Part shown: positions 3,724 to 54,463 of the stretch, in pieces
How positions within the stretch are numbered: the stretch's first letter is position 1
How the letters are laid out: each line of letters starts with the position of its first letter
IMG/VR virus record: IMGVR_UViG_3300046616_000314
Span: 310,001-374,000 of that record
Direction: 5' to 3' (one strand)
Length of the DNA stretch: 64,000 nt
The notes under the pieces: model-generated
Database searches by the model: none
What the model was told of the DNA's origin: nothing
Seen by the model: the letters and a program-made list of their open reading frames with translations, nothing else
Made by a program: the position numbers and the translations under genes

Positions 3724-4100
3724 TGGCATATTCAGGTTGGGAAATTAGCGAAAAAGATCGCGCGACACTCATGGGGATCATGGGTGCCGCTTATCCTGAC
3801 GTGATCGCTCATCATATCACCTTGCGTCCTTTTGTTCGCAAGGATGATCCCGACGAATTGCCCCCGGAAGTTGTCGCCGAAGCTGTTGGCTGGGCGGACA
3901 ACGGTGTTGGCGTACAAGCAATTGTTGTTGCGATAAACGGTTCCACCAAGCGTCCCGATGGTCGTACTTACCATATTACGTGGTCGATCAACCGCGCCGC
4001 TGGCTACAAGCCGGTGGACAGCAATCGTGTTATCGAACTAGGCTGGAATGTGCTCTTTGAGCCTGTTCCTCTGACAGTAACTCCCAAAATCTTCAGTTAG
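3720..4100 (+). CDS. 2H phosphoesterase (cyclic phosphodiesterase)
   Basis: Two HxT motifs: HHITL and YHITW. Confidence 0.75.
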   Translation: MMAYSGWEISEKDRATLMGIMGAAYPDVIAHHITLRPFVRKDDPDELPPEVVAEAVGWADNGVGVQAIVVAINGSTKRPDGRTYHITWSINRAAGYKPVDSNRVIELGWNVLFEPVPLTVTPKIFS

Positions 4101-5423: not shown

Positions 5424-5498
5424 GCGGGTGTAGTTCAGTGGTAGAACATCAGTTTTCCAAACTGAGTGTCGCTGGTTCGATCCCAGTCACCCGCTCCA
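5424..5498 (+). tRNA. tRNA-Gly (TCC)
   Basis: GCGGGTG/CACCCGC acceptor stem, D-loop AGTGGTA, anticodon arm TCAGT-TTTCCAA-ACTGA, GGTTCGATCC T-arm, encoded CCA. Confidence 0.95.
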
Positions 5499-47513: not shown

Positions 47514-47764
47514 TGGCAAAACTCACCTATCTGTCTTGCGAAGACAGAACCATATATGTCTATTCGAATACTATGCAGTGGTGGACACCGCAAATGATGG
47601 CGTGGATGAACGAACATAAATTCAAACCATACGCTGCACTGTCGCCCAAATATCCCACGACGGGCTCGCGATTTGGCGAGACGATTCCCTATGATGCCGT
47701 TTGTCTTTCGTTTACATTCGAGAACGAAGATCAAATGATGATGTTCAGGATCAAATGGCTATGA
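47513..47764 (+). CDS. FKLKW-family small protein
   Basis: AWMNEH ... FTFENEDQMMMFRIKWL. Confidence 0.8.
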   Translation: MAKLTYLSCEDRTIYVYSNTMQWWTPQMMAWMNEHKFKPYAALSPKYPTTGSRFGETIPYDAVCLSFTFENEDQMMMFRIKWL

Positions 47765-48129
47765 AACCTCCTATGCTTATTGGCATCCATGAATGGCAAA
47801 AATTCTGTGAAGAATATGGCGCCGTTGCGTTGATACCCGATGCTATCTGTTCTTCGCAATTCATCATGCGTCGGGAATTGACGAGAATTTCCAACAGTAC
47901 AAATTTCAAACATTTTGTAACTCTGGGTCCAACGATCAATCATGGTCGCTATGAAATGTTTGATATTTTTCAAACGTGGCGACCCGAGGGACCATGGGCA
48001 TATGTTCAAACGCCCGATTATGATCCCGTTACAAATAAATCGTCAACTGTGTTCAGATTGTACTTTACATCTGAGGAAGATGCTGTAGTATTCAAGATGA
48101 AATTTTCATCTTATAATTACGGGATTTGA
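47761..48129 (+). CDS. FKLKW-family protein
   Basis: LYFTSEEDAVVFKMKFS. Confidence 0.75.
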   Translation: MKPPMLIGIHEWQKFCEEYGAVALIPDAICSSQFIMRRELTRISNSTNFKHFVTLGPTINHGRYEMFDIFQTWRPEGPWAYVQTPDYDPVTNKSSTVFRLYFTSEEDAVVFKMKFSSYNYGI

Positions 48130-48521
48130 TCATGCTGTATAAGACTCGTTGGGGTACCCATATCGATCTGTCGAAGATCGTGGCGATCACTGCCGAAACG
48201 ACCTACAAGTCGGTCTCTGTCACGGCACAACTACTCAACGAACCGATGAAGTTCCATCTGCAACATGCAGCGGACAATCAATACGGCGAAGACTGCGACA
48301 AGCGTGCCCAAGCTCTTGCCGCCGAAGGCAAGGACAAAAATGAAGCCTACGCCAACTACGCCGTTGGATGCGATGCGCTTCGCATCGAATGGGTCAACGA
48401 CCTGATGCAAGCCTGGACCGACTACAAGGCTTCGCGCGCCGCTCGACTCGACGCTTTGCTGACCCGCCTGGACGGCTCGTCGGACAAGGACGCCGTTGCC
48501 CTCATCAACGCTCTGTCGTAA
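48126..48521 (+). CDS. hypothetical protein
   Basis: Operon ORF, GC-rich codons. Confidence 0.6.
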   Translation: MIMLYKTRWGTHIDLSKIVAITAETTYKSVSVTAQLLNEPMKFHLQHAADNQYGEDCDKRAQALAAEGKDKNEAYANYAVGCDALRIEWVNDLMQAWTDYKASRAARLDALLTRLDGSSDKDAVALINALS

Positions 48522-48531
48522 GGTTCAAATC

Positions 48532-48714
48532 ATGATCGGCATCGTTGACACGCTCGCTACCCTGAAGAAGTTCAGTGACAAGCTTGTTGCTGAACGTATC
48601 GCCGAAGCTCGCGCCCAAATGCCCGAGTGGATGGCGGCTTCGTTCTCTGACCAAGATGTCGAGAACTGGATCACCGAACAACGCCTGCGCGCGGCTGTCG
48701 TCGCCACGGCGTAA
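48532..48714 (+). CDS. hypothetical protein
   Basis: AAGG RBS. Confidence 0.5.
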   Translation: MIGIVDTLATLKKFSDKLVAERIAEARAQMPEWMAASFSDQDVENWITEQRLRAAVVATA

Positions 48715-48974
48715 TGTCTACTGTGGAAATCATAACGACCGATGCGGGTCCGAATGATTGCTTGGTTTACACGACCAAGGTTCATATCGATACCACCAGG
48801 GACAAAGTGTATGTCCCTGGCGCGAATCAGTTGATTCCAGAAATATATGACTTCCTAAATGCGCGTGGCTGTCGTAGTTGGTCGCATCAAAGTAACGGTA
48901 CTTTTGAAGTACGTTTCGTCTTCTACAATATGCAAGAAGATGATCTAGTCATGTTCAAACTAAAATTCATTTGA
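48714..48974 (+). CDS. FKLKW-family small protein
   Basis: EIYDFLNARG ... QEDDLVMFKLKFI. Confidence 0.75.
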   Translation: MSTVEIITTDAGPNDCLVYTTKVHIDTTRDKVYVPGANQLIPEIYDFLNARGCRSWSHQSNGTFEVRFVFYNMQEDDLVMFKLKFI

Positions 48975-49027
48975 CAGAATAAAACTCTGTGGTAGCTTAT
49001 GTATATAAGCACTTCGGAGATTCTTTG

Positions 49028-49180
49028 ATGTCTAAGCAAACGCAAGAGAGCTACGTTGGTCCGCGTCCTGCGGGTCCGCAAGCGCAAGCGTATTGGATTC
49101 AGATTACCGAAGCGCGTTGTAAGGCGGCGTGGTACTCCAAGTACCGCACCTATCGTCAACTCGTGAAGCGGGGCGTCTGA
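49028..49180 (+). CDS. hypothetical small protein
   Basis: GGAG RBS; TTGACA promoter upstream. Confidence 0.5.
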   Translation: MSKQTQESYVGPRPAGPQAQAYWIQITEARCKAAWYSKYRTYRQLVKRGV

Positions 49181-49182
49181 TC

Positions 49183-49452
49183 ATGGAAACCAAGCGTTAC
49201 AGGGCGTTCAAGACTGCGGGTCAATCCCTGGCGGCTCTGAACCGGGCTATGCTCAAGGGCGAAATCCCCTCGGACAATGCCGAACACAAGCGTCTGACTG
49301 ATGAGCATATCGCGTACGTCGGTTCGTTTGAATACGCGCTGTTGCTCTGCTATGAGCAAATCCAGCGCGGTAATCCGTGGGGCGTGATGACGACTCTCGG
49401 TTGGCATATCGAACAACGTTTTATCGCCCTTTGTGATGCGGTGAGGAAGTAA
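49183..49452 (+). CDS. hypothetical protein
   Basis: Operon ORF. Confidence 0.55.
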   Translation: METKRYRAFKTAGQSLAALNRAMLKGEIPSDNAEHKRLTDEHIAYVGSFEYALLLCYEQIQRGNPWGVMTTLGWHIEQRFIALCDAVRK

Positions 49453-49455
49453 GCC

Positions 49456-50322
49456 ATGACCGTCAACATCACCGTCATCGACAAGGACTTTGACTGGTCC
49501 AAGGCTCCCGAGCGTGTGGGCGGAAGCGTGAATTCGTGGTATCAGGATGATCGGAGGTTTTTCGAGAATCCTAAGAGCTTGGCGAAAGCCAAGGCTGTTC
49601 TTGAAGCACGCGGCTTGGACTTCGACATTTTCATCACTCCCGGTAAGCCGCTGGGTAACGGTGATATGGCTAAGATTGGCATCAAGCCGACTGCTGGGCG
49701 GACGACCATTGTCTTCACCAACAACGTGTCGCAGCCGTGGAATTGGAAGCCGCTGAACGCCTGGATCATCTGTCACCGTCTGGGGCATGTCTTCCAAGGC
49801 GGGACGACGGCTAATGGAATGCCGCATCGGGATCGGTCGGCGTTGCAGGCTATGGATTCTGGCATCCTGAATGCGATTGCTGGCTTGTGGAATGCTGGAA
49901 CTGTTTCCAACGGTGGTATGTGCCAGTATACTAAGCACACCAGCAATCTATCATCCATGGGTGCTAGTGATGATCTCATGGTGTTCTCGAATTTTATCTT
50001 CACGATGAAGAGTGCTCGCGAACACGCCATCGCTAACCCGCTGGACATTACGGCGGAATTGTTGGCGCAATTCCTCATCACCGGTTCCGTTAAGTTCAAA
50101 CGTTTCGAGGAATGGAATTTCCCCACGAAATTCGAAGTCGATGATCGGGAACTGATTGATAAAATTCGTCGTCCACCCCGTAGGCGCATGATGAGTGCCA
50201 TGGCGAATCCCGATGCCAACGTTGACGAAATGAACCGGTTGATATCCGCCACTGAGCAACGTATAAACGAAATTATTCCGCCTGCGATGGAGAGCATCAA
50301 GGGCGGCGTCTACCTCTTCTAA
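49456..50322 (+). CDS. hypothetical protein with zincin-like HRLGH motif
   Basis: WIICHRLGH ... AELLAQF. Confidence 0.7.
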   Translation: MTVNITVIDKDFDWSKAPERVGGSVNSWYQDDRRFFENPKSLAKAKAVLEARGLDFDIFITPGKPLGNGDMAKIGIKPTAGRTTIVFTNNVSQPWNWKPLNAWIICHRLGHVFQGGTTANGMPHRDRSALQAMDSGILNAIAGLWNAGTVSNGGMCQYTKHTSNLSSMGASDDLMVFSNFIFTMKSAREHAIANPLDITAELLAQFLITGSVKFKRFEEWNFPTKFEVDDRELIDKIRRPPRRRMMSAMANPDANVDEMNRLISATEQRINEIIPPAMESIKGGVYLF

Positions 50323-50334
50323 AGTGAGTGCGTC

Positions 50335-51075
50335 ATGCAACCCCTGTTCAACGTCAACGGTCTAATGTTCTGGAATGCGAAGCAGATCAAGCTTCGTAAT
50401 ACATTTAAAGAATATTTCGCTGACGGAATGCAAGCCGCACTGATCGCAGCTAACCCGGCTTGGCGTTTCGAGGAAATCGAGGCGCCGTTGCTGACCCCGC
50501 GTGATCTTCTGAACGTGAACTACACCGAAGAAGACATCTGGGTTCAAGGTGGCGAGGAAGCCCGTGAATTGGCTCTACGCCCCGAAACGACCCCTGGCAG
50601 CTACGTCTATGCCCAAAGCCTGTTAAACGGTCACACGGGCTTTAAACCGCCTCTGGTGGTGTGGCAGGCGGGTAAGTCGTTCCGGCGGGAGCAAGATCAA
50701 GTCACCAAGAACATGCGTCTCAAGGAATTCTATCAACAAGAATTCCAATGCATCTTCACGGCTGACACCCTGAACGATTATCACTCGTACATCCTTGAGC
50801 CCGTGCGCAAGATGATTGGCGACATGATCGGTCTGCCGACTCGTCTGGTGGAATCGGATCGTCTGCCGTCTTACAGTAAGATCACCATGGATGTCGAAGT
50901 TGATAACGGCGACAAGTGGATGGAAGTGTGCAGCATTTCTCTTCGCACGGACTTCCCTGACAAGGCTCGCTTTGCGGGCAAGGGTAGCGTGCAAATTGAA
51001 AAAGATTTGCTGGTACTTGAAGTCGCGATTGGTCTGGATCGCTGCGTTTACAATTGGGAGCAAGCTCACAAATGA
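50335..51075 (+). CDS. class II aminoacyl-tRNA synthetase catalytic core (GlyRS-like), no anticodon domain
   Basis: LRPETT.G, QAGKSFRRE, MRLKEFYQQEFQ (motif 2), EVCSIS.R.DF, EVAIGLDR (motif 3). Confidence 0.85.
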   Translation: MQPLFNVNGLMFWNAKQIKLRNTFKEYFADGMQAALIAANPAWRFEEIEAPLLTPRDLLNVNYTEEDIWVQGGEEARELALRPETTPGSYVYAQSLLNGHTGFKPPLVVWQAGKSFRREQDQVTKNMRLKEFYQQEFQCIFTADTLNDYHSYILEPVRKMIGDMIGLPTRLVESDRLPSYSKITMDVEVDNGDKWMEVCSISLRTDFPDKARFAGKGSVQIEKDLLVLEVAIGLDRCVYNWEQAHK

Positions 51076-51446
51076 GTAAGAGCGATCATATCAAGGATGC
51101 TCTCTGTAATTGGGTAAAGGCAGCGAGCTATTCGGTTCTTACCAACGTAGTAGACGATTGCGCGCATGACTCTACCGGTAAGCTAGTCCATATTGGGTAC
51201 GCTTATTCGTCGGGTGAGCAAGCATCACATTGGAAGCGTCGTTCCAAGCGGGTTCTTCCCGATGGATCGATTGAGCGCATCTTCGCTTTGCAACACGGCA
51301 TGAAGAAAATCGCACCGGGTATGGTTCTGCGCGTGATTCCCGATCATCTACATACGATTGAACACTCGGATGGGTCAGTCGTCGTTTCTGAGATCGATGA
51401 CAATGCGGCGATGAAAACCCCTGGCTATCGCCATTCTTGGGAATAG
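51072..51446 (+). CDS. hypothetical protein
   Basis: ATGA-coupled ORF. Confidence 0.55.
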   Translation: MSKSDHIKDALCNWVKAASYSVLTNVVDDCAHDSTGKLVHIGYAYSSGEQASHWKRRSKRVLPDGSIERIFALQHGMKKIAPGMVLRVIPDHLHTIEHSDGSVVVSEIDDNAAMKTPGYRHSWE

Positions 51447-51464
51447 TGTTTAACATTGACAATG

Positions 51465-51507
51465 AAAAACTCCGTGCTATACATGAAATATAGTCACGGA
51501 GTTTTTT
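51465..51507 (+). terminator. hairpin overlapping promoter -10 and RBS
   Basis: AAAAACTCCGTG...CACGGAGTTTTT. Confidence 0.6.
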
Positions 51508-51508
51508 A

Positions 51509-51757
51509 ATGTCTAATGACCTGAAGAAATATGATCGTGTGCGAATTTTGCATGGTTCGCAGACCTTTCACGGTCAGGTCGATAGCATTCGCAAGGGCTA
51601 TTCCAGCCAGTACGCCGATGATCGGCACTACACCGAAGATCGCCTTCTGATTTCCTTCATGCATGACGGGCAGAAGCGTTTCTTCTATCGGAACGATTTC
51701 TACGAGACTGAAGCGGGCTTGGAAGTTCTCTTCGAAAACGCTCTCAATACGATCTAA
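51509..51757 (+). CDS. hypothetical protein
   Basis: GGAG RBS; TTGACA at 51456. Confidence 0.6.
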   Translation: MSNDLKKYDRVRILHGSQTFHGQVDSIRKGYSSQYADDRHYTEDRLLISFMHDGQKRFFYRNDFYETEAGLEVLFENALNTI

Positions 51758-52167
51758 ATAAATTTCAGCGAAAAGAATACTGCGCTATCGTGGTCAAAGA
51801 AACTGACCCGATAGTGCATTAACACGTCTCCGTTTTGGGAATGTTCCCGAATCAAACGGATCGACCATTTTCCCGTAATATTTTCATTCGCAACGATTTC
51901 GTCAGCGATCTTGACGAAAGTATCCGCGAGTTTGAGCGACGAGTTTTCGATCTTGACTTGAACAACATTGCGGCATTCGCCATGCTGAAAATTAGCAAAC
52001 CGTTCACTTCTTAGATTCTTATCATCCCAGGTGATGGATGGATGTTCAAGTCTAAAATAGCTGATAGAGGTTGAATCCGTATGTGGGATTACAAACGCTA
52101 GACCTACGCCGTCACGTCGAAGTGATCCAGATGCAATACTCTTGAAAGTTTCAGAAGCTATACTCAT
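51754..52167 (-). CDS. FKLKW-family protein
   Basis: GKW ... VSFFDHDSAVFFSLKFI. Confidence 0.65.
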   Translation of the reverse strand: MSIASETFKSIASGSLRRDGVGLAFVIPHTDSTSISYFRLEHPSITWDDKNLRSERFANFQHGECRNVVQVKIENSSLKLADTFVKIADEIVANENITGKWSIRLIREHSQNGDVLMHYRVSFFDHDSAVFFSLKFI

Positions 52168-52249
52168 ACTCTAATTTAACACATAATTACTCTTGACGAA
52201 TATTAAAAGCGTGGTACTTTACATTATTCTTTGATGTTTAGGACCCCAC

Positions 52250-52765
52250 ATGGCTAAGATCACCATCAAGACCCGAAGCAAGTACGATTCCATTAAGGAA
52301 GTGCTTCGGGATGGTGTGTTGGTTGCCGAATTCGCGTGGTCGCGTCAAAAGGTCCGTTGCATCGGTCGCCCTGATGAAATCCAATGCAAGGGCACGCTCT
52401 ACGACATCAAGACGGCTACGCATTCGAGCCTGAATGGCTTTGCTTGGTTTAGCGATGTCGTCAAGCATATCAACTCCATCTACGACAACCCTGACAAAGT
52501 GAAGTTCACGTTCGTTGGAAATGATTATAGCCGTCGCGAAGGTCGCCGCGACTATAGCCCGGTTTGGAAAGCTATCGGTCTGCATGGCTGGGGTAAGCTT
52601 GAAGGCGAAGTGGGTGAATGGTGCATCCAAAATTTTGGATACGCCCCGGAAACCCGTCCAGATGCGGCAAATACAAATAGGCTTCAGCGCGGCGCCGCCT
52701 TCAACTATATCTTCATCTTCCGTTGCGATGACGATTTTGTCGCGTTTAAGATGCGGTGGCTCTGA
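52250..52765 (+). CDS. FKLKW-family domain fused to unrelated N-terminal region
   Basis: EWCIQNFGY.P ... RCDDDFVAFKMRWL; AGGA RBS; TTGACG promoter at 52193. Confidence 0.8.
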   Translation: MAKITIKTRSKYDSIKEVLRDGVLVAEFAWSRQKVRCIGRPDEIQCKGTLYDIKTATHSSLNGFAWFSDVVKHINSIYDNPDKVKFTFVGNDYSRREGRRDYSPVWKAIGLHGWGKLEGEVGEWCIQNFGYAPETRPDAANTNRLQRGAAFNYIFIFRCDDDFVAFKMRWL

Positions 52766-53016
52766 TGGCGACGATCACGGCTCCCATATCTCGCTGTCTT
52801 GACGCGGTATATAAAAGCGTCGGTTGGAACGCCGTATTACCAGATACGGTGGTTGGTCTATGGTGCGTTCAACATTTGGGTTATCTTCCGAGTGTTCAAT
52901 ACAATTCGGGTTTCCCTTCCGAAAAGAATTGGCAATGCCACGCTGAAATGTTTGTTGAGTTTCGCAGCGAAGATGATGCCGTTGTCTTCAAAATGAAGTG
53001 GAGCGGGCGAGGATGA
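52765..53016 (+). CDS. FKLKW-family small protein
   Basis: WCVQHLGYLP ... RSEDDAVVFKMKWS. Confidence 0.8.
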   Translation: MATITAPISRCLDAVYKSVGWNAVLPDTVVGLWCVQHLGYLPSVQYNSGFPSEKNWQCHAEMFVEFRSEDDAVVFKMKWSGRG

Positions 53017-53240
53017 CCATGCTCTACATTCCCTATGACGACACGCACCCGGTGTACAATTCGATCCATTCGGTGATCGGAGGTTTCGCCATGAGATCGA
53101 CTGGACCTGTCGCCGAGTGGTGCATGAAAAACATCGGCTATCGTCCCTGGATTTATGCCAGGGGCGGACGCGATTACGGTTTCGAGATCGAGTTTCGTAA
53201 TGACACGGCGGCTGCACTCTTCAAGGTGAAGTGGCTATGA
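53013..53240 (+). CDS. FKLKW-family small protein
   Basis: WCMKNIGYRP ... AALFKVKWL. Confidence 0.8.
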   Translation: MTMLYIPYDDTHPVYNSIHSVIGGFAMRSTGPVAEWCMKNIGYRPWIYARGGRDYGFEIEFRNDTAAALFKVKWL

Positions 53241-53464
53241 AAATGTTTATTTCCTATGCCGATGCTAAGCGTCATGATTTCTATAATCAAATGGCGGCTA
53301 GGGGTGGCTTGCATTTCATTTTTCTATCGCCGTTGTGGATATGGTGCAATGAAGTTCTAGATTACCAACCATTCATCAGTCTTCGGGTTGGTATTGATTC
53401 TGGTTTGGATGTAGAATTCCAGACGGACGAAGATGCGCTATTGTTCAGGATGAAATGGCTATGA
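53237..53464 (+). CDS. FKLKW-family small protein
   Basis: WCNEVLDYQP ... TDEDALLFRMKWL. Confidence 0.8.
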   Translation: MKMFISYADAKRHDFYNQMAARGGLHFIFLSPLWIWCNEVLDYQPFISLRVGIDSGLDVEFQTDEDALLFRMKWL

Positions 53465-53661
53465 TAACACTCACCGTTTCTCGTGAAAAATATGTCAAAG
53501 TCGAAGGCTGGTACGTCAAGCCATATAAGGGTGATTACTTTTATGTTTGGTGTATTGAAAATCTAGGGTATTATCCAAAGACTTCGGCGTTCCTTGATTC
53601 AGTATCCGTTAGTTTCAAAACCGAGGAAGATGCAGGGGTGTTCACAATAAAATGGCTATGA
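53461..53661 (+). CDS. FKLKW-family small protein
   Basis: GWY ... WCIENLGYYP ... EEDAGVFTIKWL. Confidence 0.8.
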   Translation: MITLTVSREKYVKVEGWYVKPYKGDYFYVWCIENLGYYPKTSAFLDSVSVSFKTEEDAGVFTIKWL

Positions 53662-53867
53662 TGGTAGTAACGAAAGTTTCGATGACCGAAGCGCAGTATA
53701 CGAAGTTGCTCGCACTTGACGAGAACTGCCGGAATGCGTGCGTCGATTGGTTTCACGATTCGTTGGGCTATCGTCCTTACACACATAGCGAATGGGGTAG
53801 CCACATTTTCGAAATGACGTTCCTGTCTGAAGAAGATGCGGCATTGTTCAAGATAAAGTTTCTCTGA
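53658..53867 (+). CDS. FKLKW-family small protein
   Basis: WFHDSLGYRP ... EEDAALFKIKFL. Confidence 0.8.
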   Translation: MMVVTKVSMTEAQYTKLLALDENCRNACVDWFHDSLGYRPYTHSEWGSHIFEMTFLSEEDAALFKIKFL

Positions 53868-54463
53868 TGTTGACCTATTATCGTGATCCCATGACGTACA
53901 ACGTCATCTGGTGCCATGAAATCCCCTCGTGCGTGCTTGGGGAAACGCGGGATGTTATCGATATTCAAGTGTTCTTCAATGGACGGTTGGTTCATACCAC
54001 TCGTACTCAAGTCAAAAGCTTGAGACGCGCGCAGGCTCAAAAATTCTTTGAAGTTCGCGTGGCTCCGCTTATGTCGGACATCGGTACGCCGTTGACGAAG
54101 CGTATCAGCGATATCGAAGGCTATAACGACCGCGATTGGATCAACCGGGCACGGACCTTCCGCTATTTCGTCCATGTCGTTGCCTGGAACGAAACGGTCA
54201 TCAAGGAAGAATTCAAGGTCTGGAAATACGGTGTGTTCCTGCCGATCCACGTGCGCGACACGGAAATCCGTTCGAAGGAAATGGCGGTGATGAACGAGTA
54301 CGTCGCAGCCCAGTTCCAAAAAGATGCGGCTGTCGGCTTCACGATCACACAATTTGGTCACACCGAAAATAAAACCGTGGTATACCCTTTTGGTTTCATG
54401 AGCGAGGACGATGCCATGCTCATGATGCTGAAATTCAATGGTTTTAAGATGATTAAGTTATGA
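53867..54463 (+). CDS. FKLKW-family domain with N-terminal extension
   Basis: FMSEDDAMLMMLKF. Confidence 0.7.
   Translation: MLTYYRDPMTYNVIWCHEIPSCVLGETRDVIDIQVFFNGRLVHTTRTQVKSLRRAQAQKFFEVRVAPLMSDIGTPLTKRISDIEGYNDRDWINRARTFRYFVHVVAWNETVIKEEFKVWKYGVFLPIHVRDTEIRSKEMAVMNEYVAAQFQKDAAVGFTITQFGHTENKTVVYPFGFMSEDDAMLMMLKFNGFKMIKL

What the first reader, a model, noticed from the sequence alone, without database searches (positions are those of the whole stretch)
50335..51075. Stand-alone class II aaRS (GlyRS-like) catalytic core, with a tRNA-Gly in the same window
Seen: 246 aa with LRPET, motif 2 (FRRE...RLKEF.Q.E) and motif 3 (GLDR), but no anticodon-binding domain; tRNA-Gly(TCC) at 5424-5498. Knowledge: these motifs match alpha2-type GlyRS, whereas most proteobacteria use the alpha2beta2 type; truncated aaRS paralogues can ligate amino acids to proteins or make Ap4A. 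Inference: anticodon-independent charging (useful if anticodons are cleaved by host defences) or a non-translational glycyl-transfer role.
Basis: partly seen in the sequence, partly recalled or inferred. Interest (0 to 1): 0.6.

Follow-up and report, generated by a model that had tools for sequence, protein, structure and literature searches.

The report
Minimal stand-alone GlyRS core of jumbo phages
A 561-kb phage encodes a 246-residue protein that is just the catalytic core of a glycyl-tRNA synthetase, with every catalytic residue kept and the anticodon-reading domain gone; it belongs to a large, uncharacterised, virus-only family that probably activates glycine, though what it transfers the glycine to is still unknown.

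Summary
Window 50335-51075 (+) encodes a 246-aa class II aaRS catalytic core whose nearest relatives by sequence and by fold are dimeric (alpha2) GlyRS. It keeps motifs 1, 2 and 3 and the three glutamates of the GlyRS glycine pocket. It lacks GlyRS insertion 1 and the whole anticodon-binding domain.

It is not a fragment. It belongs to one well-supported, virus-only clade (at least 130 clusters at 50% identity, members 210-350 aa, never fused to another domain). That clade occurs in jumbo and mega-phages, including cultured Sinorhizobium, Xanthomonas, Caulobacter and Brevundimonas phages. It is predicted to form the canonical class II homodimer.

No anticodon-binding partner, GlyQ/GlyS or carrier protein is encoded in the 561-kb genome, and no protein neighbour is conserved. 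The one recurrent neighbour is tRNA genes (15 of 41 loci within 500 bp, about 5% expected), but of mixed identity. In one clade the neighbour is an amber-suppressor tRNA(CUA).

Most likely this is a minimal, anticodon-blind glycine-activating synthetase that acts on tRNA acceptor ends. The acceptor is inferred, not shown.

The parts
50335..51075 (+). Gene for the 246-aa stand-alone GlyRS-type class II catalytic core (P0001); the end coordinate includes the stop codon
   Evidence: ORF list and translation; Pfam PF00587 above cut-off; GlyRS is the best match in NCBIfam, PDB sequences and folds
50356..50376 (+). Residues 8-14 (NGLMFWN): family-specific conserved N-terminal segment, predicted to be part of the dimer interface
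   Evidence: N8, G9, L10, F12 and W13 are invariant among close relatives; residues 10-15 are in the predicted homodimer interface
50461..50502 (+). Motif 1 (residues 43-56, WRFEEIEAPLLTPR): class II dimer-interface strand with its conserved proline, P55 (invariant among the close relatives of A1)
   Evidence: Alignment A1; residues 46-54 form the core of the predicted homodimer interface
50569..50604 (+). LALRPETTPGSY loop (residues 79-90). E84 aligns with Glu188 of T. thermophilus GlyRS, the first glutamate of the glycine pocket
   Evidence: P83, E84, T85 and T86 are invariant down to 38% identity; the offset to 1ati numbering comes; segment conservation is 0.86 against a protein mean of 0.63
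50650..50754 (+). Motif 2 (residues 106-140): two strands plus the loop QDQVTKNM. R117 aligns with Arg220 and E136 with Glu239 of T. thermophilus GlyRS
   Evidence: K114, S115, R117, E119, E131, F132, Q134, E136 and F137 are invariant; the alignment to GlyRS chains keeps the same loop length; conservation is 0.85-0.90 in the strands and 0.69 in the loop
50851..50958 (+). GlyRS-signature strands (residues 173-208): SDRLPSYS..T.DVE...WMEVCSISLRTDFP
   Evidence: Aligns with the ...LSHYS.RTVDIEY...WGEL.GIANRTDFDL block of actinobacterial GlyRS; S174, R176, L177, P178, Y180, S181, T184, D186, E197, S200, S202, R204 and D206 are invariant
51007..51054 (+). Motif 3 (residues 225-240, LLVLEVAIGLDRCVYN). 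E229 aligns with the third pocket glutamate (Glu359 of T. thermophilus GlyRS) and R236 is the motif 3 arginine. The protein ends 10 residues later, so there is no anticodon-binding domain
   Evidence: E229, G233, D235 and R236 are invariant; aligns with VIEPAxGLTR / IEPSLGADR of full-length GlyRS, which continue for about 120 more residues
5424..5498 (+). tRNA-Gly(UCC), with bacterial-type acceptor stem (G1-C72, C2-G71, G3-C70) and U73. A candidate substrate only; not specifically linked to the gene
   Evidence: ARAGORN; 45 kb from the gene, one of 36 tRNAs and one of two tRNA-Gly in the genome; sequence

Best explanation
The gene encodes a homodimeric, virus-specific, minimal enzyme derived from alpha2-type glycyl-tRNA synthetase.

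Shown: the fold, all class II catalytic motifs, the acidic glycine pocket of GlyRS, strong purifying selection on these residues, and the absence of any anticodon-binding module in cis or detectable in trans.

Inferred, step 1 (about 0.8): it binds ATP and glycine and forms glycyl-adenylate.

Inferred, step 2 (about 0.45 for the statement as a whole): it transfers glycine to the 3' end of tRNA. It would recognise the tRNA only through the acceptor end and motif 2 loop, not the anticodon. The likeliest substrates are the phage and host tRNA-Gly, which carry the standard G1-C72, C2-G71, G3-C70, U73 acceptor identity. This would give the phage a GlyRS activity independent of the host's unrelated alpha2beta2 enzyme during infection.
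For: Catalytic core and glycine pocket:
- The invariant columns across 27 members, down to 38% identity, are exactly the catalytic positions: E84, K114, R117, E119, E131, Q134, E136, D186, E197, S200, S202, R204, E229, G233, R236.
- E84, R117 and E136 fall on residues 188, 220 and 239 of T. thermophilus GlyRS by the offsets. E229 falls on the IEP glutamate before motif 3. By my recollection of Arnez et al. 1999, these are the glycine-pit glutamates and the motif 2 arginine.
- A231 matches the Ala found at that position in real actinobacterial GlyRS.
- GlyRS is the top fold match: Z 23.5 and 21.9 over 231-234 of 246 residues; Foldseek E 2e-15.

Dimer:
- Homodimer prediction ipSAE 0.85 against a best control of 0.00. 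That mark was reached by 21 of 30 solved homo-pairs and 0 of 23 single chains. The three runs agree in at least 88% of contacts, and the partner pLDDT is at least 85. The interface lies on motif 1.

Family:
- About 1,900 word-search hits and 130 clusters at E <= 1e-30, all 352 aa or shorter.
- One clade, SH-aLRT 100.
- The nearest cellular relatives are full-length GlyRS at 26-35% identity, median open frame 481 aa.

Link to tRNA:
- Homologues lie within 500 bp of a tRNA gene in 15 of 41 de-duplicated loci, against about 5% expected from the own genome's tRNA density. Within 2 kb the figures are 23 of 41 against about 11%. The flanking isotypes differ, so the arrangements are independent.
- In the Phosso clade the gene sits in a CysRS ... 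peptidyl-tRNA hydrolase cluster.
- A second catalytic-core-only aaRS in the same genome (HisRS-like, 145 aa) lies 14 nt from tRNA-His, and also lies near tRNA-His in Phosso.
- Huge phages are reported to carry many aaRSs, and one phage carries a CRISPR spacer against the host GlyRS gene (PMC7162821).
Against: - No biochemical evidence exists, and no RNA run holds the locus.
- GlyRS normally needs anticodon bases C35 and C36 and insertion domains to bind tRNA (established knowledge). This protein lacks both.
- The family is acidic (median pI 5.45, net charge -6) and has no added RNA-binding module.
- The motif 2 loop is only moderately conserved: 0.69 against 0.63 overall.
- The nearest tRNA is rarely tRNA-Gly: it was the nearest in 1 of 24 loci, and tRNA-Gly made up 11 of 108 flanking tRNAs.
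- In the window's own genome, and in the Caulobacter and Brevundimonas phages, no tRNA is nearby.
- The clade sits on a very long stem branch of 2.3 substitutions per site, which is compatible with a change of function.
- It scores far below the GlyRS equivalog cut-offs: 58.7 against 312 bits.
Confidence: 0.45

Rival explanations
1. It activates glycine (or another very small amino acid), but the acceptor is not tRNA. It could be a protein side chain, a carrier protein thiol, a small molecule or a nucleic-acid base. This would resemble other truncated class II paralogues: amino acid:carrier-protein ligases, EpmA/PoxA and AsnA.
For: - It has the stand-alone core architecture with no tRNA-body-binding domain.
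- The aa:carrier-protein ligase Bll0957 (3mey) is a strong fold match, Z 20.5, and is of similar size.
- The protein is acidic.
- The long stem branch suggests neofunctionalisation.
- There is no consistent pairing with tRNA-Gly.
Against: - No PP-binding carrier protein is encoded in the genome.
- No protein neighbour is conserved in 45 loci, so no candidate acceptor or partner is visible.
- Sequence affinity is to GlyRS, not to the SerRS-like ligases.
- The cysteines at positions 139 and 199 are not invariant, which argues against a ligase-type zinc site.
- The only enriched neighbours are tRNA genes.
Confidence: 0.2
2. It is the dedicated synthetase of a non-standard phage tRNA that host enzymes cannot charge because they read the anticodon. 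The prime candidate is the amber-suppressor tRNA(CUA) encoded just upstream of the homologue in the Phosso-like clade. That would make a natural orthogonal pair that inserts glycine at UAG.
For: - A real tRNA with anticodon CUA (Rfam 64-73 bits) lies 53-1,875 bp upstream on the same strand in 9 loci, including cultured phage Phosso. It also lies 1.7 kb downstream in the divergent locus L044.
- Lack of an anticodon-binding domain is exactly what such an enzyme would need.
- The own genome has a tRNA with CTA in an irregular anticodon loop.
Against: - The 9 loci are one syntenic clade, so they count as roughly one evolutionary event.
- In the own genome the odd tRNA is 165 kb from the gene.
- The CUA tRNAs show no tRNA-Gly affinity. 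Best matches to Lys, His, Ile and Gly are all about 0.7. The discriminator is G in the five copies predicted with a CCA end and A in L044, not U, and the acceptor stems vary.
- TAG is an ordinary stop in the own genome, ending 139 of 599 long frames, with no excess of in-frame junctions.
- No coding-strand gene in the 45 loci needs TAG read-through.
- Most family members have no CUA tRNA nearby.
Confidence: 0.1
3. It makes a nucleotide product rather than an aminoacyl product, for example Ap4A or a related dinucleotide made by condensing ATP in the GlyRS-type active site. This would tune or jam host stress or defence signalling.
For: - Intact ATP-binding motifs 2 and 3.
- Human GlyRS is known to synthesise Ap4A by direct ATP condensation (my recollection of Guo et al. 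2009; not checked here).
- A core without tRNA-binding parts would suit such a role.
Against: - All three glycine-pocket glutamates are invariant, which this chemistry would not require.
- There is no association with nucleotide-signalling genes, and no PADLOC match.
- tRNA-gene proximity is unexplained by this reading.
Confidence: 0.07
4. It is a non-catalytic pseudo-synthetase, that is a regulatory or scaffolding subunit like HisZ or the DNA polymerase gamma accessory subunit, or else a decaying gene remnant.
For: - HisZ and Pol gamma B are good fold matches, Z 17-19.
- Truncation is typical of such paralogues.
- One homologue (L045) carries an in-frame TGA.
Against: - Every catalytic residue is invariant across the family, whereas pseudo-synthetases lose them.
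- The family is large and its length is conserved.
- The model is confident and compact, not a fragment.
- There is no conserved partner gene.
Confidence: 0.05

Closest known systems
Dimeric (alpha2) glycyl-tRNA synthetase, e.g. T. thermophilus, M. tuberculosis, N. equitans and human GlyRS (PDB 1ati, 8t5n, 5z5e, 2pme)
   Same: - Class IIa catalytic fold (Z 21.9-23.5).
- Motifs 1, 2 and 3; the RPET loop; the same motif 2 loop length; the D-x-E / W-x-E / RTDF strands.
- The three pocket glutamates and both arginines.
- Predicted motif 1 homodimer.
   Different: - Half the size: 246 aa against about 460-500 aa.
- No C-terminal anticodon-binding domain, no insertion 1, a shortened pre-motif-3 insertion, and no first ~25 residues.
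- 58.7 bits against a 312-bit equivalog cut-off.
- A separate virus-only clade on a long branch.
Amino acid:[carrier protein] ligases (Bll0957 / Atu2573 type, PDB 3mey)
   Same: - Stand-alone class II core of about 300 aa without a tRNA-binding domain. Some of these activate glycine (my recollection of Mocibob et al. 2010).
- Strong fold match, Z 20.5.
   Different: - Those are SerRS-derived, zinc-dependent, and encoded next to a carrier protein.
- This family is GlyRS-derived, has no invariant cysteines, and has no carrier protein in the genome or neighbourhood.
Full-size aaRSs of huge phages and giant viruses (Al-Shayeb et al. 2020, PMC7162821)
   Same: - Encoded by very large phage genomes together with many tRNAs, often beside tRNA arrays.
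- The same genome also has ThrRS, SerRS and CysRS.
   Different: - Those are reported as related to host enzymes, and no domain loss is mentioned.
- This one is a core-only form with no cellular counterpart of its size.
Engineered aaRS 'urzymes' and minimal catalytic domains (e.g. PMC12033045)
   Same: A drastically reduced synthetase that keeps only the catalytic core.
   Different: - Urzymes are laboratory excerpts of about 130 aa.
- This is a natural, conserved, dimer-competent 246-aa core under purifying selection.
HisZ, the regulatory subunit of ATP phosphoribosyltransferase
   Same: A truncated class IIa paralogue without an anticodon domain (fold Z 17-18.6).
   Different: - HisZ has lost its aminoacylation residues and works with HisG.
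- Here the catalytic residues are invariant and there is no conserved partner.

Membership tests
Class II aminoacyl-tRNA synthetase catalytic domain (Pfam PF00587, class IIa) | Antiparallel-sheet catalytic fold with motifs 1, 2 and 3 | tested here: met
   PF00587 scores 39.5 bits against a 29.3 cut-off. The motifs are located in alignments A1 and A2. The model has pLDDT 92 and matches class IIa enzymes at Z 19-23.5.
alpha2 glycyl-tRNA synthetase (glycine--tRNA ligase) | GlyRS-specific active site: three glutamates forming the glycine pit, plus the motif 2 and motif 3 arginines | tested here: met
   E84, E136, E229, R117 and R236 are invariant. They map to T. thermophilus GlyRS residues 188, 239, 359, 220 and 366 through the alignments. 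The residue roles are from my recollection of Arnez et al. 1999; a literature search for them found nothing.
alpha2 glycyl-tRNA synthetase (glycine--tRNA ligase) | C-terminal HGTP-type anticodon-binding domain | tested here: not met
   The protein ends 10 residues after motif 3. There is no PF03129 match in it. The genome's only PF03129 domain is in ThrRS. None of the best 150 family members exceeds 352 aa.
alpha2 glycyl-tRNA synthetase (glycine--tRNA ligase) | Score above the curated equivalog cut-off (NF003211 / TIGR00389) | tested here: not met
   58.7 bits against 312, and 30.7 against 243.3.
alpha2 glycyl-tRNA synthetase (glycine--tRNA ligase) | Homodimer through motif 1 | tested here: met
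   Prediction only: ipSAE 0.85 against a best control of 0.00. The mark was reached by 21 of 30 solved homo-pairs and 0 of 23 single chains. The interface includes residues 46-54. The pass may partly reflect resemblance to solved aaRS dimers.
alpha2 glycyl-tRNA synthetase (glycine--tRNA ligase) | Glycine-dependent ATP-PPi exchange and aminoacylation of tRNA-Gly | not testable with these tools
   Biochemical assay needed.
alpha2beta2 GlyRS (GlyQ/GlyS) | Match to the GlyQ (PF02091) or GlyS (PF02092) families, or presence of a GlyS partner | tested here: not met
   The protein does not match PF02091. Neither family is found in the genome, while the control genomes are positive.
Amino acid:[carrier protein] ligase | SerRS-like core with a zinc site, and a phosphopantetheinyl carrier protein as acceptor (usually adjacent) | tested here: not met
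   Sequence affinity is to GlyRS. There are no invariant cysteines. PF00550 is absent from the genome. No neighbour is conserved. A host carrier protein cannot be excluded.
Pseudo-synthetase regulators (HisZ, Pol gamma B) | Loss of the catalytic and amino-acid-binding residues; an obligate partner enzyme | tested here: not met
   The catalytic residues are invariant, and there is no conserved partner gene.
Dedicated suppressor-tRNA synthetase (natural orthogonal pair, PylRS-like logic) | Consistent co-occurrence with a cognate tRNA(CUA), and in-frame UAG codons that need it | tested here: inconclusive
   A tRNA(CUA) is adjacent in 10 of 46 loci, but 9 of these are one syntenic clade. It is not adjacent in the own genome. 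No in-frame TAG was found in coding-strand genes of the loci. TAG is a normal stop in the own genome.

The most novel reading that the evidence does not exclude
The compact enzyme is a natural anticodon-blind synthetase. It forms an orthogonal pair with phage tRNAs that host synthetases cannot charge. The clearest candidate is the amber-suppressor tRNA(CUA) encoded directly upstream in the Phosso-like phages. This would let the phage insert glycine at UAG, or keep anticodon-loop-altered, defence-evading tRNAs charged, independently of the host.
Probability: 0.1. Interest if true: 0.85.

Novelty: new variant of a known kind. Interest (0 to 1): 0.55.

Why it matters
If this family is an active synthetase, it would be among the smallest natural class II aaRSs. 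It would be a roughly 245-residue dimeric core working without any anticodon-binding or insertion domain. That bears on three things:
- how much of a synthetase is needed for tRNA charging, which is the question behind the 'urzyme' and minimal-aaRS work;
- how jumbo phages make translation independent of the host, here by replacing an unrelated alpha2beta2 host GlyRS;
- the search for compact, anticodon-blind scaffolds for genetic-code expansion.

If the acceptor is not tRNA, the family would be a new phage-specific glycyl-transfer enzyme.

The family is abundant and occurs in at least four groups of cultured phages (Sinorhizobium Phosso, Xanthomonas XbC2, the Caulobacter Bertelyvirus phages and Brevundimonas vB_BpoS). 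The question is therefore directly testable at the bench. Databases currently label it inconsistently as 'glycyl-', 'serine-' or generic 'aminoacyl-tRNA synthetase', or as 'hypothetical protein'.

Tried and rejected
- **Split GlyRS with a partner in trans: rejected.** The only HGTP anticodon domain is in ThrRS. There is no GlyQ or GlyS, no conserved neighbour and no fused forms.
- **Two-gene module with the upstream 288-aa ORF: rejected as weak.** A distant paralogue (pairwise E 5e-6) also flanks the mini-HisRS. But a third copy sits among tail-fibre and baseplate-like genes. The ORF has no homologue next to mini-GlyRS in other phages and no Pfam or PADLOC family.
- **Specific linkage to tRNA-Gly: not supported.** tRNA-Gly made up 11 of 108 flanking tRNAs and was the nearest tRNA in only one locus.
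- **TAG recoding: not supported.** There is none in the own genome and no read-through genes in the related loci. The first version of that scan was noise from antisense shadow ORFs.
- **Isotype origin of the CUA tRNAs: no clear answer**.
- **Megablast of the region against phage records:** no match.
- **PHROGs:** no family.
- **Literature:** searches for a prior description of truncated phage GlyRS found none. The search for the GlyRS pocket residues found nothing, so that mapping rests on alignment offsets plus my recollection.
- **Expression:** only DNA runs hold the locus. The single full holder is a rhizosphere metagenome that is probably the source.
- **Tree placement:** the attachment point of the family relative to bacterial and archaeal GlyRS is unresolved because of long branches. 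Two cellular rows (L065, L075) behaved as outliers, probably from wrong ORF calls.
Full report
**1. The observation**

The ORF at window 50335-51075 (+) is real and encodes 246 residues. It follows the preceding same-strand ORF after 12 nt, so it is probably co-transcribed with it. A simple promoter and terminator scan showed nothing notable.

The protein passes the Pfam threshold for the class II aaRS core shared by the Gly, His, Pro, Ser and Thr enzymes: PF00587, 39.5 bits against a 29.3 cut-off. Its best NCBIfam match is dimeric GlyRS, E 4.6e-16, but far below the equivalog cut-off. Its best PDB sequence matches are bacterial and archaeal alpha2 GlyRS. tRNA-Gly(UCC) at 5424-5498 is also real.

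**2. The genome**

The window is bases 310001-374000 of a single 561,116-bp virus contig, estimated 97% complete. It comes from a rhizosphere metagenome.

ARAGORN finds 36 tRNAs in it, including a second tRNA-Gly(GCC). The tRNA-Gly lying 45 kb from the gene is therefore not a specific association.

TAG behaves as an ordinary stop: it ends 139 of 599 long frames, and in-frame long-long junctions show no excess at TAG. No alternative genetic code is indicated.

The genome's other aaRS-type genes are:
- a ThrRS of 421 aa that keeps its anticodon domain but lacks the N-terminal part;
- a complete SerRS;
- a CysRS;
- a 145-aa HisRS-like core.

**3. Anatomy**

I aligned the protein with full-length GlyRS from Mycobacterium leprae and other cellular genomes.

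The protein keeps:
- motif 1 (residues 43-56);
- the RPET loop (79-90);
- motif 2 (106-140, with the same loop length as GlyRS);
- the GlyRS-typical D-x-E / W-x-E / RTDF strands (173-208);
- motif 3 (225-240).

The protein lacks:
- the first ~25 residues;
- the ~40-50-residue insertion 1 between motif 1 and RPET;
- part of the insertion before motif 3;
- the whole anticodon-binding domain of about 120 residues.

Some relatives carry an insertion of about 80 residues at exactly the insertion 1 site, so that site is plastic.

Across 27 members, down to 38% identity, the invariant columns are the catalytic ones. By the coordinate offsets, E84, R117 and E136 fall on T. thermophilus GlyRS residues 188, 220 and 239. 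In one search, E229 and R236 fall on the IEP glutamate and the motif 3 arginine. From my recollection of the GlyRS structural literature (Arnez et al. 1999), these are the three glutamates of the 'negatively charged pit' for glycine and the two ATP/carboxylate arginines. A literature search did not retrieve a source for this.

A231 replaces the serine of the T. thermophilus enzyme, but real actinobacterial GlyRS also have alanine at that position.

**4. Structure**

The AlphaFold model is confident: pLDDT 92.1, pTM 0.90.

The best structural matches are N. equitans GlyRS (Z 23.5, rmsd 2.4 A, 234 residues aligned) and human GlyRS (Z 21.9). Next come:
- ProRS and ThrRS, about Z 20.6;
- the stand-alone amino acid:carrier-protein ligase Bll0957, Z 20.5;
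- SerRS and HisRS;
- Pol gamma B, Z 19.1;
- HisZ, Z 17-18.6.

A homodimer prediction passes its controls: ipSAE 0.85 against a best control of 0.00. That mark was reached by 21 of 30 solved homo-pairs and 0 of 23 single chains. The runs agree in at least 88% of contacts, and the partner pLDDT is at least 85. The interface is formed by residues 10-18, the motif 1 strand 46-54 and motif 2 residues, which is the canonical class II arrangement. Because aaRS dimers are well represented among solved structures, this shows likeness rather than proof.

**5. The family**

Homologues at 38-67% identity, and of the same length, occur in:
- Sinorhizobium phage Phosso (469 kb);
- two uncultured phages of about 635 kb;
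- Xanthomonas phage XbC2 (368 kb);
- five Brevundimonas jumbo phages;
- the Caulobacter Bertelyvirus phages.

These records annotate it variously as serine-tRNA synthetase, RNA synthetase class II, aminoacyl-tRNA synthetase or hypothetical protein.

The word search found 1,941 proteins, the best 120 of them 237-331 aa long. Many lie on contigs of 200-560 kb, and JGI names them glycyl-tRNA synthetase.

The exhaustive profile search of 1.84 billion representatives found 130 clusters at E <= 1e-30. None of the best 150 hits is longer than 352 aa, so no member is fused to an anticodon-binding or other large domain.

In about 185,000 prokaryotic species genomes, the nearest relatives are full-length alpha2 GlyRS at 26-35% identity, with a median open frame of 481 aa.

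In a maximum-likelihood tree the compact proteins form one clade (SH-aLRT 100) on a stem of 2.3 substitutions per site. Where that clade attaches is unresolved.

**6. Context**

No protein neighbour of the window's gene recurs next to homologues in 45 other loci.

One clade of nine loci, including Phosso, shares this gene order: CysRS - hypothetical - tRNA(CUA) - small ORF - mini-GlyRS - phosphatase ... peptidyl-tRNA hydrolase. In the own genome these genes are scattered, or in the case of Pth not found.

tRNA genes are the only recurrent neighbours. 15 of 41 de-duplicated loci have a tRNA within 500 bp, and 23 of 41 have one within 2 kb. The own genome's tRNA density predicts about 5% and 11%. 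The nearest tRNA differs between loci (Thr, Ala, Tyr, Arg, Ser, Val, Cys, Gly, CUA), so the arrangements are independent. tRNA-Gly is not preferred.

In the Caulobacter and Brevundimonas phages, and in the window itself, no tRNA is adjacent.

The genome encodes no GlyQ or GlyS and no phosphopantetheine carrier protein. The protein matches no defence-system model.

**7. The suppressor lead**

The CUA tRNAs are real tRNAs, scoring 64-73 bits in Rfam. Several points weigh against a dedicated pairing:
- They show no clear isotype affinity.
- Their discriminator is G in the five copies predicted with a CCA end, and A in L044, not the U73 of the phage tRNA-Gly genes.
- Their acceptor stems vary.
- No coding-strand gene in the related loci contains an in-frame TAG supported by homologues.

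The idea of a dedicated suppressor/synthetase pair therefore rests on adjacency within essentially one clade. It remains a low-probability but attractive reading.

**8. Interpretation**

The conservation pattern is that of an active enzyme, not a pseudo-synthetase. Glycine plus ATP giving glycyl-adenylate is the best-supported first step.

The second step is inferred. tRNA-array proximity favours a tRNA acceptor end. So does the parallel case of a HisRS-like mini-core lying beside tRNA-His in two genomes. The general practice of huge phages carrying their own aaRSs points the same way, as does one reported case of a phage targeting the host GlyRS gene (PMC7162821).

Against efficient tRNA charging:
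- the elements GlyRS normally uses to hold tRNA are missing;
- the protein is acidic;
- the branch leading to the family is long.

The main rival is transfer to a non-tRNA acceptor, but no such acceptor is visible in the genome or neighbourhood.

**9. Verdict**

- The identification as a stand-alone alpha2-GlyRS-type core is correct.
- The split-enzyme alternative was tested and not found.
- The link to the window's tRNA-Gly and the anticodon-cleavage rationale are not supported.

This is a new, virus-specific variant of a known kind of enzyme. It is abundant, uncharacterised and directly testable in cultured phages.

Noticed in passing
window 47701-54463: At least ten small ORFs (68-198 aa), mostly head-to-tail on the + strand on both sides of the mini-GlyRS gene, share a C-terminal motif (..EEDA..F-K/R-x-K-W/F-L/I), in several of them preceded by a conserved LGY.P segment. 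This is a tandem paralogue array with no Pfam family.
   Followed up: partly
L006 1321-1758 (-), about G000:C1:201133-201570, outside the window: A second catalytic-core-only synthetase: a 145-aa HisRS-like ORF (TIGR00442 E 7e-32, far below cut-off). It ends 14 nt before tRNA-His on the same strand. It is conserved at 73% identity in phage Phosso, where it lies about 280 bp from tRNA-His, and in two uncultured phages of 630-640 kb.
   Followed up: partly
L001 5594-5669; L008-L011, L014, L021, L022, L024 upstream of position 4001; L044 6427-6502 (-): An amber-suppressor tRNA (anticodon CUA, Rfam 64-73 bits) lies next to the mini-GlyRS homologue in the Phosso-like clade. It is annotated 'tRNA-OTHER' in Phosso. 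Its isotype origin is unclear, and no in-frame TAG was found in the neighbouring genes.
   Followed up: yes
L052 3101-3176, = G000:C1:195100-195175: The own genome has a tRNA whose anticodon arm is irregular: a 6-bp stem with a 6-nt loop CCCTAA, or an 8-nt loop if the closing G-C is opened. The loop contains CTA. ARAGORN cannot assign it, and Rfam gives 47.6 bits. It may be a degenerate or non-canonical suppressor.
   Followed up: partly
L052 2504-2610, = G000:C1:194503-194609: A tRNA-like gene (Rfam 51.9 bits) with 41 nt where the anticodon loop should be. ARAGORN reads it either as tRNA-Thr(CGT) with a 21-nt intron or as having a long extra arm. It was missed in the intron-free scan.
   Followed up: no
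window 49456-50322 (+); L006 168-1112; L051 2611-3540 (-): The 288-aa ORF directly upstream of the gene belongs to a three-copy family in this genome (shared H-x-x-x-H and KSAR motifs) with no Pfam family. One copy flanks the mini-HisRS and another lies beside tail-fibre and baseplate-like genes.
   Followed up: partly
L045 4487 (homologue of the gene): One homologue carries an in-frame TGA at a position where 44 relatives have mostly Leu or Gly. It is either a broken copy, a sequencing error, or a phage with TGA recoding.
   Followed up: no
proteins P0035, P0041, P0067, P0076, P0079, P0096 (alignment A3): A subset of the family has an insertion of about 80 residues exactly at the site of GlyRS insertion 1, between motif 1 and the RPET loop. 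P0110 has a different insertion in the D-x-E hairpin.
   Followed up: no
L003 1168-2433 (+), = G000:C1:264204-265469: The phage ThrRS (421 aa) matches the thrS model only from position 169 onwards. It keeps the catalytic and anticodon domains but lacks the N-terminal (editing-side) part. This is another trimmed synthetase in the same genome.
   Followed up: no
L133 86-2688 (CcrSC); L002 608-2453 (XbC2): In two unrelated cultured jumbo phages the homologue lies 1-5 kb downstream of NAD-salvage genes: NadM and NAMPT in CcrSC, NadR and PnuC in XbC2. This may be coincidence.
   Followed up: no
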